DNA of 64,000 nucleotides from Pocillopora damicornis (GCF_003704095.1 NW_020846126.1:124001-188000), one strand, 5' to 3'; counted from the first letter of the stretch, positions 1,321 through 30,703 are shown. Notes: generated by a model from the letters alone, not told the origin. Translations and numbers: made by a program.

Positions 1321-2298
1321 TTGGCCTAAAGATACTCTGGATTGATCTGGGCTTCCGTTCATACCAGAATGACTCACGAAATTATTCGCCAACTGTTCTT
1401 GTTGCAGCTGAGGTAACGGATTTTGAAAGGGATTGCTCCCGGAATTACTCGCGTTCATATTAGTAGTTCGAGAAAATGTCGCTCCGATTTCGTGCGCCAC
1501 TGTATTCAAAGCGATCGATTGAGTCGCTGAGCTAGGCCCATTCATAGATCCCATCAAAGCGTTGTTGTTGGCAAGCATGTTCATATCGAGCGAATTATTA
1601 CCATACTGGGCTGCAACTTGCAGTCTTGCATCCCTCGCCACCTTACTCTGCAATGCCGAGTTCACTGTTGACATCGGCAGAGACGATGACGGGGCAGGAC
1701 TCAAACCAACACTTCCAAGATGGAGGTCATTGGATGAAGTGAGCGGTGTTGCAGGAGTAGGAGTCCCACTCGTACTGACCGGCATTTGAGGAGGAGACGA
1801 CAAAGAATTGTTCACTGCCGGACTTTTAACCGATGTTAAAGTAGTCAACGATGGACTATCAGGACTAGATACGCTAACTGTCGAAGAGATGGCACTGGTG
1901 TTGAGCGTAGAGCTCGCGCCACTTGACAGGGGAACATTCGATTGAAGAATTTGCTGCAAACTCGAGGTAGCACTTGAAACATCAGCTGTTGTTTCACCAT
2001 TAGTTAGACCATCAGAATTAGGAATCATTGCGGGTCCACCAAGTTCATCGGGTAAACTGGCATCCAGGTCTTCCATAAACTTCCAATTGAACTCTTTAAA
2101 GGGAAGACGGTAATTTAAATAAGTTAAAGGAACGGAACATAGACCTGGAGAACTCACTACAACTGCAAACTTAAAACGCTCACAAACACAGGAAAAAAAT
2201 CAGTTGACATTATATTTACCAGCATTGTCGGTTGGTGTGTCTGGGGCTCCTATTTTCGGTCGCTTGTTCGGTGGTCCGTCTACCAGTTGCTCGGCCAT
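1321..2298 (-). CDS. CREBBP: CREB-binding protein / p300 histone acetyltransferase, first two coding exons (2220-2298, 1321-2093); gene continues off the left edge
   Basis: ATG at 2298 gives MAEQLVDGPPNKRPKIG..., then a GT-AG intron and EFNWKFMEDLDASLPDEL. This matches the CBP/p300 N-terminus (MAENLLDGPPNPKRAK...DLENDLPDEL). A low-complexity Ser/Asn/Gln region follows and ends at a GTAAGT donor (1320). No KIX or HAT domain lies in the window. Confidence 0.85.
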
Positions 2299-2765
2299 TA
2301 CTACTACAATACAAAAACCCACTACACGAAAACGACTTGTTGATCATACATAGTCATCGCCTTTAAAACGGCGAAGCGCCTTCGTCCCCTGAAAATAAAT
2401 TCAATCAGTAGATTACTAATCTGACTAAGGAAAAGAATCTCTCCGATGGAATGAAGTCACAACGAGCCGTACTACAACAAAATTAACGCAGAAGTAAAAA
2501 CAAAATCATGGCCGCTTACCATTGTCGTTCTCACAGCATTATGACAACGAACCGAACAAAACAGTATAAGACGGCTTTAAGATCTTTTGTAAGTGTCCTT
2601 CGATGAACGAATTATCTCCTCTCCTCCAGATGAATCTGATTTTTCCTGTCGTAAAGCTTCAACTAGTAATGAAAACTTGAAGTAAAATAGCGTTCCGAAA
2701 AGTTCCCTGTGTCAATGCCGTGAAGCGCAACAAGCGATGGCTCAACAGCGCGGGGGGGCCCAGCC

Positions 2766-2784
2766 CCACCATCATGCATTGCGG
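2766..2784 (+). promoter_or_regulatory. ZNF143/Staf-type binding motif in the CpG-rich CBP promoter region
   Basis: CCACCATCATGCATTGCGG versus Staf consensus TACCCATAATGCATYGCGG; the same motif recurs at two other gene starts. Confidence 0.5.
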
Positions 2785-27300: not shown

Positions 27301-30300
27301 TTGTCTAATCAAATTCAATTGCACGAGCATGCTTCATATTCCTATTATGCATGCTCATGACATCAGCAAACAAATCCCTCAAGAAAAAAATTTTCCACCA
27401 GGTTGAAAATATTATAAAACAATTGGTTCATACGTCATCTGTGTATTCATCGATATATGAAGCACTTGGGAAGTTTGGAGAGTACTCAAGAAGCTAGAGT
27501 TGCTCTCGGCTACACCTTGAGCAACTCTTATGCATCTTTTGTGCCCTCCAAACTTCCCGTGTGCTTCATATCTCAATGAACACGCGCTGATGTATGAACC
27601 AATTGTTAGTTTGTATACTCACCGCAACAACAGAATTTCCACGTGGGTCTAGGATGCGCACCTTCTTGTCCTGAGAAAGTAAAGGTTAGAAGAATGATGT
27701 CATTGTAGAAATGTACTTTATCAGAATAAAAATTATGTGAAATTCTTATCCGGTATAAAATTAGAAATATAACACTGTCTTATAAATAGCTGACCTTGCT
27801 GGATGTAACTAATAAAGAACCATCCCCTTTCCAGCAAAAACTTTGAACCAAGTCGCGATGGTTTTCCAAATCTGTACCCAAACAAGAAATGATAAAACAC
27901 CCTTTGATTAATACACAACTGCAAATATATGAAAATCATATATGTACACTGCTATTGAAGAAATGGATGTAGAAGCAATCCTCACAGTCACGAATACTAC
28001 TTAACTAGTAGTGAAAATAAGGCTTGGAAAAAATTCAGGTCTGTATGGGATTTGAACTCATGACCTCTGTAATACAGGAGCAGCGCTCTACCAACTGAGC
28101 TAACAAACCAACTGGGAGCTGATCATTATGTTAGTTACAAATAAAACCTCCAAGTGGTGAATACATGACTGTAAATATATGAAAATCATATATGTGCACT
28201 GCACTTATTTTCACTACTAGTTAAGTCACATTCATAACAGCAAGGATCACTTCTACATTCAACCCTTTGATTAATTGTGTTATATAAATGCATGTAGTTC
28301 ATATAGAGTATTATGAAATATTAAATTATTATTTTAGTTAAATAGTAATACTACTCTTATTGCATAATATGATACTGACTGTAGTTCAGCTGCTGTTTCT
28401 GTAGATCCCAGATGGTGACAGACTTCCCACATGAACTAGCTAGTACCTATTTCCAACAATCAGCAAAATCATAGAAAAAAATCACACAAACAGTAGAGTA
28501 TTTTGTGATTTATAATCATGAATGAAATCTCATGTTTTTAAAATTTATGATTCCACATACGGTAGGTAATAAAAAAAGATGCAAATTTAAATAAGGTAAA
28601 ATGTTTTCTTGTGCAAGTCTTTTCATTTAATATTACCAATCATACCATACCTCACTTGCTGCAGGATGGAACAGTACATTTTCTACGCGACCCTTAGAAA
28701 GAGAGTAACAAAAAAAGTAATAAAAAAAGTAAACTCATAATCACTATGGGCATTTTTTGTTCACCCCATGGAATTTTTTAAAGCCATTTAGCAATTGGGT
28801 TGTTGATGTTTTCCTATACATTGTTGTTGTTTTGTATCTTTTTAAAATGGGAGGAGGGATTGAATTACAGTTATAGAAATATTAAAGTTTTATTACTGAT
28901 GTTGTAACTTACAGGCTGCTGTGGAAGAGTACAAAGTGGTGCAGACAGAGTCTCTTTTATGCCTTCCCCTGGAATTTGCCACAGTTTAATCTGCAAACCA
29001 GATAGAAAATAGAACTAGAGTTACAACAGATATTTTGAGCCTGGTCCATTTTGACATTTGACAAGGAGGCAGTAAAAATTAAAATTTTGTAATCTTAGAG
29101 TATTTTCAAACTTCTTAAAAACATCACGGGTAACTGCCATCTTCTCATCAAGTTGTCAGTTTAAGCAGCCTCTACAAGCTTGTGGTTAATAAATTTTCAG
29201 ACACAGAATTAAAAAAAAAATTAAACTTACTGAACAGTCAAAAGAACAAGTTGTAAGAAGCCTTCCATCAGAGGGTGAAAAGTCCAGGTCAGACACAAAA
29301 TCTGAACAAGAGGAAAAGGCCAATAAAAAAAACAGACTAAGTAAGAGAGATAACTTCCTCTCCAGATCAAATGACTGTTTGAAAATGTTCAAGCAAAGCT
29401 GTCCAACAGAGCAAGGAAAATATCATCTAGTAACCAATAAAATTAATAATTCTAATGATAATAATAATAGATGTACCTGCATGAGCATGGAGGAAAGGCA
29501 GTGACTGTTCCTTCCTTCCTACCTCTTCAAGAGGAAGAACACCAAGACTTCCTCCACCTGAGGGATGAATATACTCTGTAAATGGCGATTACCAAATTTT
29601 TACATTGCCCTACTTCTTTAAGGTTTGTATTCTGTACTTCTTAAGAGAAAATTTAATCACTTAATAAAAATTTTTCTACATCTTATCTGCCTGTTTTCCA
29701 TGACCTAAAACAAAGTGGCTGGTTCTTGAATCAAGTAAAAACAACCAAGTTATAGAGGCAATTATTATCTTTGTTTTTTCAACATGCAATTTTCAATAAA
29801 GGTTAAAATAGATGGTGTGATAAGTCTTACCTCCTGCATCCACATTGAATGCCATGAAGATGTCACTTGCTTTGATGTGATTTCCATGGGAGCTCATTAG
29901 GTTTCCAACTCTTATATCAGTAATGGACTCCTAGAAAACAGGAATATTGTTTGGTCAAGTATATAATGTGTTCAAAGAAATATTCATAGACACTGTGCTC
30001 TATAAAAGGATCACTCAAACCACAAAGAGTTTTGACTGCTCTTCCCTTGAGAAAACCTCATGTGGCAATTGGCCAAGTTTGCTGGCAGCAAGCTCTCATA
30101 TATGATGTATTAATTGAAATCCTGTTAAAATCCCTATATATAATTTACAAACCCCACACTTACTGGGAACACACCATCTCCACTCCTATCTGGCTTGCAT
30201 CAAATAACTGCCCCACCCCCCTGGACCCCAGGAAATGGATTTGACTTAATGATTCACTGCAGAGTTGGACTAAAAAATTAAACATAGCCCTTAAATAAGC

Positions 30301-30703
30301 ATACAAGGCTCTAACACACTATGGTCAAGTTTTAAAACAAAGCCTTCAACTGCTGAACATTTGCAGCATAATAGACTTCCAAGGTTTACGATGATTGCAG
30401 TCTAGCATTATTTCTTGCATTTAATCTTAGATGCCAGATAAAATGAAATTGCCTTAGTTTAGTTTCGTACCGGTGCTCTCAAACCCTAATATCTTAAGTA
30501 ATTATACTGCTTGTCTACGAACGCAAGTAGTCTATGAAAAAGAAAAGAACTGAACATAAGTCAAAAGGTAAACTGAAATTTGCGAAGTACGTAGACTGAC
30601 AATCGTCATTGAAGCAAAGATCGTGAACAACAGCGGCACCTACCTCTTTCTTAGGAATCTTCGGAACTGCATTTCGATATTTGGAAGCCTTAAAACGATG
30701 CAT
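18322..30703 (-). CDS. CORO7: Coronin-7 (tandem coronin, POD-1 family), ~29 coding exons
   Basis: Starts MHRFKASKYRNAVPKIPKKE (30644-30703). WD40 exons can be followed in frame (e.g. 29831-29930, 29477-29557, 29231-29301, 28913-28990, 28651-28692, 28380-28446, 27795-27871, 27623-27670, 26990-27076). Second coronin unit begins RTSKFRHLHG (~24300). Two F(H/Q)xDLFPDT motifs. Acidic C-terminus EGVDDDEW|DD* with a 9-nt last coding exon 18322-18330. Confidence 0.95.
19754..19980 (+). mobile_element. ~225-bp MITE with TTAA|CC...GG|TTAA ends (piggyBac-like), in a CORO7 intron
   Basis: TTAACCTCTT...AGAGGGTTAA termini; internal sequence shared with 47141-47338 (inverted) and 48309-48503. Confidence 0.75.
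20864..21319. mobile_element. Degenerate non-autonomous DNA transposon (CAGG...CCTG ends, GTCGCC subterminal repeats)
   Basis: CAGGTGTGATATT versus the reverse complement of AATTTCATGCCCTG; repeated GTAGCCAA/GTTGCCA/GTCGCCAA motifs near both ends; no clean TSD. Confidence 0.5.
21885..22145 (-). mobile_element. Old tRNA-derived SINE copy in a CORO7 intron
   Basis: Minus strand TGGCTCAGTGG (A-box-like) head, GTGTTGTCTCCTTGAGTAAGA core and CTCATGCTACAGAAA tail; related to 23355-23590. Confidence 0.55.
23355..23590 (+). mobile_element. Old tRNA-derived SINE copy in a CORO7 intron
   Basis: GTGGCTTAATG (A box) ... GAGTTCAAGACC (B box) ... TTGTGTCTTAAGGCAAAACA core ... GGGGGAGTA...GTTGCTTCAT tail. 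Confidence 0.55.
27418..27607. repeat. 190-bp near-perfect palindrome (foldback MITE-like)
   Basis: AACAATTGGTTCATAC...GTATGAACCAATTGTT; inner arms GATATATGAAGCAC/GTGCTTCATATC, GGGAAGTTTGGAG/CTCCAAACTTCCC, AGAGTTGCTC/GAGCAACTCT. Confidence 0.9.
27913..28261 (-). mobile_element. tRNA-containing retroposed repeat with direct and inverted modules and a 14-bp TSD
   Basis: ACCCTTTGATTAAT at 27899-27912 and 28262-28275; tRNA-like segment 28039-28109 (-) with TAGCTCAGTTGG and GAGTTCAAATCC boxes; direct repeat ~27918-27952/28168-28202; inverted arms ~27960-28022/28203-28261. Confidence 0.8.

What the first reader, a model, noticed from the sequence alone, without database searches (positions are those of the whole stretch)
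1321..30703. CBP-ADCY9-CORO7 microsynteny matches human 16p13.3 in order and orientation
Seen: CBP, ADCY9 and CORO7 are consecutive protein-coding genes, all on the minus strand, within 30 kb. Established (from memory): human CREBBP and ADCY9 are neighbours and CORO7 follows a few genes later, all on the same strand; ATXN10 lies on 22q13 with the CBP paralogue EP300. Inference: this block may have been kept since the cnidarian-bilaterian ancestor. It links a cAMP source to the CREB co-activator, possibly held together by shared regulatory DNA in the 6.5-kb ADCY9-3'/CBP-5' interval.
Basis: partly seen in the sequence, partly recalled or inferred. Interest (0 to 1): 0.8.

Follow-up and report, generated by a model that had tools for sequence, protein, structure and literature searches.

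The report
Ancient ADCY9–CBP gene neighbourhood in a coral
In this stony-coral DNA the adenylate cyclase 9 gene sits directly in front of the CBP/p300 gene, with coronin 7 just upstream. The cyclase-CBP pairing is also found in a soft coral, a ribbon worm and mammals, so it looks inherited from the common ancestor of corals and bilaterian animals.

Summary
The three genes are real, lie on the minus strand and are the right orthologues.
- **Cyclase:** one 1,150-codon exon that scores 820 bits to AC9 against 431 to AC8.
- **CBP/p300:** single copy in the assembly. Only its first three exons are in the window; the rest lies in the 15 kb to the left.
- **Coronin:** the tandem double type, i.e. CORO7/POD-1.

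The genes are not strictly consecutive. A UFM1 gene on the plus strand (15773-17439) lies between ADCY9 and CORO7.

The order CORO7, UFM1 (opposite strand), ADCY9, CBP recurs in the octocoral Dendronephthya. Desmophyllum shares it as far as its 10-kb flank reaches. A jellyfish-lineage contig has CORO7 followed by ADCY9.

The key result is from the nemertean Tubulanus: an AC9 orthologue ends 4.2 kb upstream of CBP on the same strand. With the mammalian order (CREBBP, ADCY9 ... CORO7), the ADCY9-to-CBP tandem most likely predates the cnidarian-bilaterian split. CORO7 is shown only within cnidarians and mammals.

The idea of shared regulatory DNA is not supported so far. RNA contigs cover most of the 6.5-kb interval (probably the ADCY9 3'UTR), which leaves about 2 kb before the CBP start site.

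This is one more ancient microsyntenic pair, of moderate interest.

The parts
1..2737 (-). 5' part of the CBP/p300 gene inside the window. It holds a non-coding exon at about 2519-2737, an exon at 2220-2387 with the ATG at 2298 (peptide MAEQLVDGPPNKRPK...), an exon at 1321-2093, and then intron sequence. The rest of the gene lies at G000:C2761:111146-124000.
   Evidence: Spliced RNA contigs from four studies give the joint 2387/2519 and a loose end at 2220 that continues at 2093. Exon 1 matches Dendronephthya and Tubulanus CBP. The domains lie left of the window. HAT_KAT11 occurs only at this locus in the assembly.
2496..2530 (-). Motif conserved between hexacoral and octocoral. It spans the donor site of the first CBP exon, which ends in an ATG.
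   Evidence: It is 92% identical over 36 bp to L010:16358-16393. The 15-mer occurs once in the window against 0.02 expected, and among the other species' loci only in Dendronephthya.
2738..4449 (.). Gap between the transcribed ADCY9-side stretch and the CBP start site. It should hold the CBP promoter. Only sparse, low-depth RNA contigs lie here.
   Evidence: tables 2 and 8
4450..8838 (-). ORF-free, transcribed stretch directly downstream of the ADCY9 stop, most simply a 3.3-4.4 kb ADCY9 3'UTR. The strand and the poly(A) site are not determined.
   Evidence: RNA contigs cover 4450-7909, 5119-7909, 5518-7909 and 7955-8200 in four runs. No stop-free stretch exceeds 144 codons and no clear poly(A) signal was found.
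5367..5420 (-). Short non-coding block shared with Desmophyllum, inside the transcribed stretch.
   Evidence: 87.5% identity over 56 bp to L008:20281-20336, collinear with the genes.
8839..12294 (-). ADCY9 orthologue with a single coding exon of 1,150 codons plus the stop.
   Evidence: Pfam finds AC_N and two Guanylate_cyc domains. In the PDB search AC9 scores 820 bits against 431 for AC8 and 409 for AC5. Every named protein among the 120 best hits but one mislabelled turtle entry is called AC9. The gene tree follows the species tree.
12295..12764 (-). Conserved stretch upstream of the ADCY9 ATG (5'UTR or promoter), facing UFM1 head to head.
   Evidence: The roughly 80%-identity alignment with Desmophyllum runs on to 12764.
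15773..17439 (+). UFM1 gene with five coding-exon matches, between ADCY9 and CORO7 on the opposite strand.
   Evidence: Exon matches to Nematostella and Dendronephthya Ufm1 genes. It is the only Pfam Ufm1 hit in the assembly, at window 15918-15995. The same position holds in Desmophyllum, Nematostella and Dendronephthya.
18404..30703 (-). CORO7/POD-1-type coronin gene with two tandem coronin units. The ATG is at 30703.
   Evidence: Unit 1: DUF1899 at 29796-29930 and 29430-29588, WD40_4 at 25019-25399. Unit 2: DUF1899 at 24033-24500, WD40_4 at 19202-19366. Exons are collinear with the 922-aa Dendronephthya and 929-aa Desmophyllum genes.
28037..28109 (-). tRNA-Thr (TGT) gene inside a CORO7 intron.
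   Evidence: Rfam tRNA at 51.3 bits; ARAGORN.

Best explanation
The window holds a real, inherited gene neighbourhood. Read along the minus strand, the order is CORO7, then UFM1 on the opposite strand, then an intronless ADCY9, then the single-copy CBP/p300 gene.

The core is the ADCY9-to-CBP tandem, where the 3' end of the cyclase faces the CBP promoter on the same strand. [quoted passage not shown] It has survived in anthozoans, at least one spiralian (a nemertean) and vertebrates, and has been lost or stretched in other lineages.

CORO7 belongs to the same neighbourhood across Cnidaria, and in mammals it lies on the same side and strand a few genes further out.

Why the pair persists is inferred, not shown. 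In the coral the transcription units are packed so tightly that few breakpoints could separate them without damaging one of them. About 2 kb separates the end of the ADCY9-side transcript from the CBP start site. CBP upstream control DNA probably overlaps the cyclase's 3' region.
For: **Gene identities**
- ADCY9.
- CBP, full domain set and single copy.
- CORO7, double coronin.
- UFM1.

**Cnidarian synteny**
- Dendronephthya has CORO7-like (+), Ufm1 (-), ADCY9 (+) and a 2190-aa gene (+) that starts 2.7 kb downstream. That gene's exons are collinear with the coral CBP.
- Desmophyllum has coronin, UFM1 and ADCY9 in the same order, plus a collinear non-coding block downstream.
- Nematostella has Ufm1 (-) next to ADCY9 (+).
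- A medusozoan contig has the last CORO7 exons about 6.8 kb upstream of ADCY9 on the same strand.

**Bilaterian synteny**
- In Tubulanus polymorphus a 1155-aa cyclase ends 4.2 kb upstream of a 2265-aa CBP on the same strand.
- Its last exon scores 505 bits to AC9 against 224 to AC5 and AC8, and is 56% identical to Owenia AC9.
- Its CBP is exon-collinear with the coral gene.
- A positional gene list for goat reads TRAP1, CREBBP, ADCY9, SRL, TFAP4, GLIS2, VASN, DNAJA3 (PMC9902602).
- The human strands and the nesting of VASN in CORO7 are from my memory.

**Tight packing**
- RNA contigs place the CBP first exon at about 2519-2737 and a transcribed ORF-free stretch at 4450-8200.

**Chance estimate (my own inference)**
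- A given pair being same-strand, tail-to-head neighbours in one more genome has odds of about 2.5e-5.
- If both genes are confined to one chromosome of about 1000 genes, the odds are about 5e-4.
- Two further lineages make chance negligible, even after allowing for about 10^4 coral gene pairs.
Against: - Only one invertebrate bilaterian shows the pair.
- Amphioxus, a scallop, Owenia and Hydra had no called neighbour within the 10-kb flanks I could fetch. That is uninformative rather than negative.
- Capitella's CBP flank is 57% N.
- In the medusozoan contig ribophorin I, not CBP, follows ADCY9.
- Nematostella v1 has no CBP within 10 kb downstream.
- Vertebrate order and orientation rest on one gene list and on memory, not on coordinates fetched here.
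- CORO7 was not tested in any invertebrate bilaterian.
- UFM1 is not in the mammalian block (human UFM1 is on chromosome 13, from memory).
- No evidence for a constraint mechanism was obtained.
Confidence: 0.8

Rival explanations
1. Selected co-regulation. The pair would be kept together because DNA between or inside the two genes serves both, as in a genomic regulatory block. Alternatively, transcription running out of ADCY9 tunes the CBP promoter, which would tie a cAMP source to the CREB co-activator.
For: - The tail-to-head arrangement and short spacing recur in three phyla: 2.7 kb in Dendronephthya, 4.2 kb in Tubulanus, and about 2 kb between transcripts in the coral.
- Sparse low-depth RNA contigs lie in the 2738-4449 gap.
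- Small conserved non-coding blocks exist at 5367-5420 and 7747-7830.
- Ancient pairs of this kind have been attributed to cis-regulatory constraint (PMC3514665, abstract).
Against: - No conserved non-coding element beyond the CBP exon-1 donor is shared with the octocoral.
- Contigs cannot show a read-through transcript or its strand.
- CBP is broadly expressed and is not a typical target gene of a regulatory block (my knowledge).
- No accessibility, contact or expression data were available.
Confidence: 0.25
2. Neutral survival. The adjacency is ancestral but unconstrained, and simply has not yet been broken in slowly rearranging lineages. A tiny intergenic target in compact ancestral genomes would help.
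For: - The pair seems absent or stretched in several lineages: the medusozoan contig and Nematostella v1 within 10 kb, and Drosophila and C. elegans from memory.
- The gap is very short in the coral, the octocoral and the nemertean.
- Anthozoans and vertebrates are known for conserved synteny (PMC10719294, PMC8809688, abstracts).
Against: - Survival in three lineages separated by more than 550 My, with orientation intact, is more than most neighbouring pairs achieve.
- In mammals the gap is about 70-80 kb (memory), and the pair still holds.
Confidence: 0.45
3. Coincidence or artefact. The genes came to lie together independently in coral, nemertean and vertebrates, or the window is misassembled, or the cyclase is not an AC9 orthologue.
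Against: - The same order and strands appear in independent assemblies of an octocoral, another scleractinian and a nemertean.
- AC9 identity is clear in both coral and nemertean.
- The AC9 tree mirrors the species tree.
- RNA contigs from four studies match the locus.
Confidence: 0.04

Closest known systems
Mammalian 16p13.3 segment: TRAP1, CREBBP, ADCY9, SRL, TFAP4, GLIS2, PAM16, CORO7/VASN, DNAJA3
   Same: ADCY9 lies immediately upstream of CREBBP on the same strand, and CORO7 lies further upstream on that strand. The order comes from the goat list in PMC9902602; the strands are from memory.
   Different: - Mammals have four or five genes between ADCY9 and CORO7 and lack UFM1 there. The coral has only UFM1 between them.
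- TRAP1 and PAM16 homologues lie on other contigs of this coral assembly.
- The mammalian spacing is tens of kb, against about 2-6 kb in the coral.
- The coral CBP is the single pro-orthologue of both CREBBP and EP300.
Ancient conserved microsyntenic pairs of unrelated genes (Irimia et al. 2012, PMC3514665) and genomic regulatory blocks
   Same: Two unrelated genes have stayed adjacent, with orientation kept, across cnidarians and bilaterians.
   Different: - No conserved non-coding elements spanning a bystander gene were found.
- CBP is not a classical developmental target gene.
- I could not check whether this pair is in that paper's lists, because no supplements are held. The main text names neither gene.
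Octocoral (Dendronephthya gigantea) CORO7-UFM1-ADCY9-CBP block
   Same: The same four genes in the same order and on the same strands.
   Different: The block is tighter, with 2.7 kb from ADCY9 to CBP. The octocoral ADCY9 gene model does not translate as one piece, whereas the coral gene is intronless.

Membership tests
AC9-class transmembrane adenylate cyclase (ADCY9 orthologue) | Two membrane-spanning regions, each followed by a class III cyclase domain (C1, C2) | tested here: met
   Pfam finds AC_N plus two Guanylate_cyc stretches in one 1,150-codon ORF.
AC9-class transmembrane adenylate cyclase (ADCY9 orthologue) | Closer to AC9 than to any other AC class | tested here: met
   In the PDB search AC9 scores 820 bits against 431 for AC8 and 409 for AC5. 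Every named protein among the 120 best hits but one mislabelled turtle entry is called AC9. The tree follows the species tree. No tree with AC1-8 as outgroups was built.
AC9-class transmembrane adenylate cyclase (ADCY9 orthologue) | AC9-specific biochemistry (weak forskolin response, C-terminal auto-inhibition) | not testable with these tools
   Needs an enzyme assay.
CBP/p300 (KAT3) co-activator | Domain set TAZ1, KIX, bromodomain, HAT_KAT11, ZZ, TAZ2 and IBiD in that order | tested here: met
   All were found exon by exon on the minus strand of C2761:111146-124000. The exons are collinear with annotated Dendronephthya and Tubulanus CBP genes.
CBP/p300 (KAT3) co-activator | Single pre-duplication gene in invertebrates | tested here: met
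   HAT_KAT11 matches only this locus in the 234-Mb assembly. The assembly is fragmented, so this is a lower bound.
Coronin 7 / POD-1 (tandem coronin) | Two complete coronin units (DUF1899, WD40 propeller, WD40_4) in one gene, without a coiled-coil tail | tested here: met
   Two DUF1899 and two WD40_4 hits lie in order on one strand. Relatives are annotated at 922 and 929 aa. The lack of a coiled coil was not examined.
Ancient conserved microsyntenic pair | Orthologous, unrelated genes adjacent in several phyla on both sides of a deep node | tested here: met
   ADCY9-CBP is adjacent in Scleractinia, Octocorallia and Nemertea. Mammals are added from the literature and memory.
Ancient conserved microsyntenic pair | Retention beyond the neutral expectation | not tested
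   Only a rough estimate was made. No genome-wide permutation was possible with these tools.
Genomic regulatory block | Conserved non-coding elements within or beyond the bystander gene that act on the neighbouring target gene | tested here: inconclusive
   Only three short blocks were found. One is the CBP exon-1 donor and two are shared only with another scleractinian. No functional data were available.

The most novel reading that the evidence does not exclude
The ADCY9-to-CBP tandem is a selected unit. Transcription of the cyclase gene, or elements in its long 3' region, would set the output of the adjacent CBP promoter. The cell's main CREB co-activator would then have been physically coupled to a cAMP-producing enzyme gene since before cnidarians and bilaterians split.
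Probability: 0.15. Interest if true: 0.7.

Novelty: new member of a known kind. Interest (0 to 1): 0.42.

Why it matters
Deeply conserved neighbour pairs of unrelated genes are rare markers of ancestral genome organisation, and they are candidates for hidden regulatory coupling.

This pair joins two steps of one textbook pathway, cAMP production and CREB co-activation, and it is compact enough in cnidarians to dissect experimentally.

It also anchors human 16p13.3 (and, through EP300 and ATXN10, 22q13) to a defined cnidarian segment.

Against that, hundreds of such pairs are already catalogued, and no coupling mechanism is shown here. The finding is a solid but modest addition.

Tried and rejected
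**Locus look-ups that gave no answer**
- Gigantopelta ADCY9 and CBP look-ups failed because those isoforms are not on record. Both proteins list a contig of the same length, 102,884,749 bp, which shows at most a shared chromosome.
- Amphioxus, scallop, Hydra and Owenia ADCY9 loci had no informative neighbour within the 10-kb flanks.
- Capitella's CBP upstream flank is mostly N.
- The 207-aa 'gene' downstream of Nematostella ADCY9 is a tandem repeat, not CBP.

**A search that missed its aim**
- A CBP homologue search seeded with what turned out to be a frog protein returned only vertebrates.

**Wider 16p13.3 synteny, rejected**
- HSP90/TRAP1 and Pam16 homologues are on other contigs.
- A possible JIP3/4 (MAPK8IP3-like) link suggested by Owenia did not hold. 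JIP_LZII has no hit, WD40_2 is not specific, and Owenia pieces do not match the coral flank.

**Other checks**
- No clear poly(A) signal was found at the RNA contig ends.
- No paper in the searchable library mentions ADCY9, CREBBP and synteny or microsynteny in a relevant way.
- The supplements I could search do not list the pair.

**Method note**
- Spliced genes were searched exon by exon by reference.

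
Full report
**Where the window lies.** The window is G000:C2761:124001-188000, from a 314,640-bp contig of a 234-Mb assembly. Its cyclase is 84% identical to a Desmophyllum pertusum protein and 62-65% identical to sea-anemone proteins. The source is therefore a stony coral.

**ADCY9.**
- One uninterrupted ORF runs on the minus strand from the ATG at 12294 to the stop at 8839-8841.
- Pfam finds the AC N-terminal membrane region and two class III cyclase domains.
- Against all solved structures it scores 820 bits to bovine and human AC9, 431 to AC8 and 409 to AC5.
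- Every named protein among the 120 best database hits but one is called adenylate cyclase 9, from cnidarians to mammals; the exception is a mislabelled turtle entry.
- A maximum-likelihood tree of 37 of these proteins reproduces the species tree: Hexacorallia with Octocorallia, Medusozoa, deuterostomes and protostomes. That pattern is expected of a single-copy orthologue.
- No AC1-8 outgroups were available for the tree.

**CBP/p300.**
- Spliced RNA contigs from four independent studies define three exons in the window: a non-coding first exon at about 2519-2737, a 131-nt GT..AG intron, an exon at 2220-2387 with the start codon at 2298, and an exon at 1321-2093.
- The encoded N-terminus (MAEQLVDGPPNKRPK...) matches the first exon of the annotated CBP genes of Dendronephthya and Tubulanus.
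- The rest of the gene lies left of the window.
- Searched exon by exon by reference, the minus strand of C2761:111146-124000 carries TAZ1, KIX, bromodomain, HAT_KAT11, ZZ, TAZ2 and the CREB-binding (IBiD) domain, in that order.
- HAT_KAT11 matches no other place in the assembly. This is therefore the single pro-orthologue of vertebrate CREBBP and EP300.
That step was left out.

**CORO7.**
- The start codon is at 30703 (MHRFKASKYRN...).
- The gene has two coronin units. The first has DUF1899 split over 29796-29930 and 29430-29588, and WD40_4 at 25019-25399. The second has DUF1899 at 24033-24500 and WD40_4 at 19202-19366.
- The last coding exon is near 18404-18520. The exons are collinear with the 922-aa and 929-aa coronin genes of Dendronephthya and Desmophyllum.
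- Two tandem coronin units define the CORO7/POD-1 type.

**Correction to the observation.**
- The three genes are not consecutive. A UFM1 gene lies on the plus strand at 15773-17439, with five exon matches to Nematostella and Dendronephthya Ufm1 genes. It is the only Pfam Ufm1 hit in the assembly.
- UFM1 is head to head with ADCY9 and tail to tail with CORO7.
- A tRNA-Thr gene sits in a CORO7 intron.

**Synteny within Cnidaria.**
- Dendronephthya gigantea (octocoral) has CORO7-like (+), Ufm1 (-), ADCY9 (+), and then, 2.7 kb on, a 2190-aa gene (+). Fourteen of that gene's exon matches are collinear with the coral CBP.
- Desmophyllum has the coronin 3' end, an unannotated UFM1 and ADCY9 in the same order. 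A non-coding block downstream is collinear with the window. This suggests its ADCY9-CBP gap is about twice as long and that CBP lies just beyond the flank.
- Nematostella v1 has Ufm1 (-) beside ADCY9 (+), but no CBP within 10 kb.
- A contig whose cyclase groups with Medusozoa has the second WD40_4 exon and the last exon of a CORO7-like gene about 6.8 kb upstream of ADCY9 on the same strand. Ribophorin I lies downstream.
- Hydra shows nothing within 10 kb.

**Synteny in Bilateria.**
- The decisive result is the nemertean Tubulanus polymorphus. A 1155-aa cyclase gene ends 4.2 kb upstream of a 2265-aa CBP gene on the same strand.
- The cyclase's last exon scores 505 bits to AC9 against 224 to AC5 and AC8, and is 56% identical to Owenia AC9.
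- The Tubulanus CBP is collinear with the coral gene from exon 1 to the last exon.
- For mammals, a positional gene list for goat gives TRAP1, CREBBP, ADCY9, SRL, TFAP4, GLIS2, VASN, DNAJA3 (PMC9902602).
- From memory, in human all three genes are on the minus strand, with ADCY9's 3' end facing the CREBBP promoter and CORO7 (which contains VASN) further upstream. That is the same order and orientation as in the coral.
- Amphioxus, scallop and Owenia gave no called CBP or CORO7 within the 10-kb limit of the look-up tool, and Capitella's flank is gaps. These results are uninformative.
- From memory, fly and nematode keep the genes on one chromosome but not adjacent.

**Is this more than chance?** My rough estimate is as follows. 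A given pair being same-strand, tail-to-head neighbours in another genome has odds of about 2.5e-5, or about 5e-4 if both genes are confined to one ancestral chromosome. Two further independent lineages make chance negligible, even after allowing for about 10^4 coral neighbour pairs. Parsimony therefore places the ADCY9-to-CBP tandem in the cnidarian-bilaterian ancestor. CORO7 was linked at least in the cnidarian ancestor, and its place in mammals fits the same origin. That last step is untested in invertebrate bilaterians.

**The 6.5-kb interval.**
- RNA contigs from poly(A) and random-primed libraries cover 4450-8200 almost continuously. Coverage is nearly absent from 2738-4449, which argues against DNA carry-over.
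- The covered stretch has no long ORF. It is most simply a 3.3-4.4 kb ADCY9 3'UTR. Contigs do not show strand or ends, a repeat at 7910-7954 breaks them, and no clear poly(A) signal was seen.
- Only about 1.7-2.4 kb is left for the CBP promoter.
- Conserved non-coding sequence is scarce. Two short blocks are shared with Desmophyllum (5367-5420 and 7747-7830). One 36-bp block is shared with the octocoral, and it turns out to be the donor site of the first CBP exon.
The tight packing offers a simpler partial explanation, because there are few harmless breakpoints.

**What is known.**
- Ancient microsyntenic pairs are an established class (PMC3514665; PMC8851819).
- No paper in the searchable library discusses this pair, and the supplements I could read do not list it.
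- The scan's own notes hold nothing on it for other DNA.

**Verdict.** This is a new, well-supported member of a known kind and is of moderate interest.

Noticed in passing
window 8839-12294; L008, L009, L015 against L012, L013, L017: The AC9 gene is a single exon in the coral, Desmophyllum, Nematostella and the medusozoan contig, where the locus translates straight to the protein. In amphioxus, scallop and Owenia it spreads over 35-59 kb. Because its position is conserved, this points to intron loss in place (or gain in bilaterians) rather than a retrocopy inserted elsewhere.
   Followed up: partly
window 2496-2530 and 2220-2387 (-): The first CBP exon ends in an ATG directly at the donor site, in both the coral and Dendronephthya. 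After splicing this would open a roughly 15-codon upstream ORF ahead of the main start at 2298.
   Followed up: partly
window 4033-4142 and 4544-4664 (+): Low-depth RNA contigs are spliced with GT..AG on the plus strand. This indicates an antisense or divergent non-coding transcript between the CBP promoter and the ADCY9 3' region.
   Followed up: no
window 35754-38552 (-): A 933-codon single-exon ORF is rich in Ser, Thr and Val repeats, with one likely membrane span near its C-terminal third. It has no Pfam match and looks like a mucin-like surface protein.
   Followed up: no
window 62977-63999 (-): A voltage-gated potassium channel gene (BTB_2 plus Ion_trans) runs off the right end of the window.
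   Followed up: no
window 54060-54224 (-): This is the only Ataxin-10 domain hit in the assembly, so ATXN10 is on the same contig about 24 kb beyond CORO7. Human ATXN10 lies on 22q13 with EP300 (memory), which fits a duplicated ancestral segment.
   Followed up: partly
window 32352-32867 (-): An HMG-box exon of the gene just upstream of CORO7.
   Followed up: no
L009:18611-19231 (Nematostella v1): The annotated 207-aa 'gene' downstream of ADCY9 is a tandem repeat of an approximately 33-residue unit, not a real neighbour gene.
   Followed up: yes
proteins P0289 and P0299 (pigeon, hawksbill turtle): These annotated CBP models also carry HSP90 and ATPase domains. They are fused TRAP1-CREBBP gene models, an annotation artefact that incidentally shows TRAP1 beside CREBBP in sauropsids.
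   Followed up: no
L017:1-2279 (Owenia): A JIP3/4-type gene (RH1, JIP_LZII, WD40_2) lies just upstream of ADCY9 on the same strand. Its human relative MAPK8IP3 is also on 16p13.3 (memory). No matching gene could be shown on the coral contig.
   Followed up: yes
window 55349-55831 and 60617-60716: Runs of N, left as they are.
   Followed up: no
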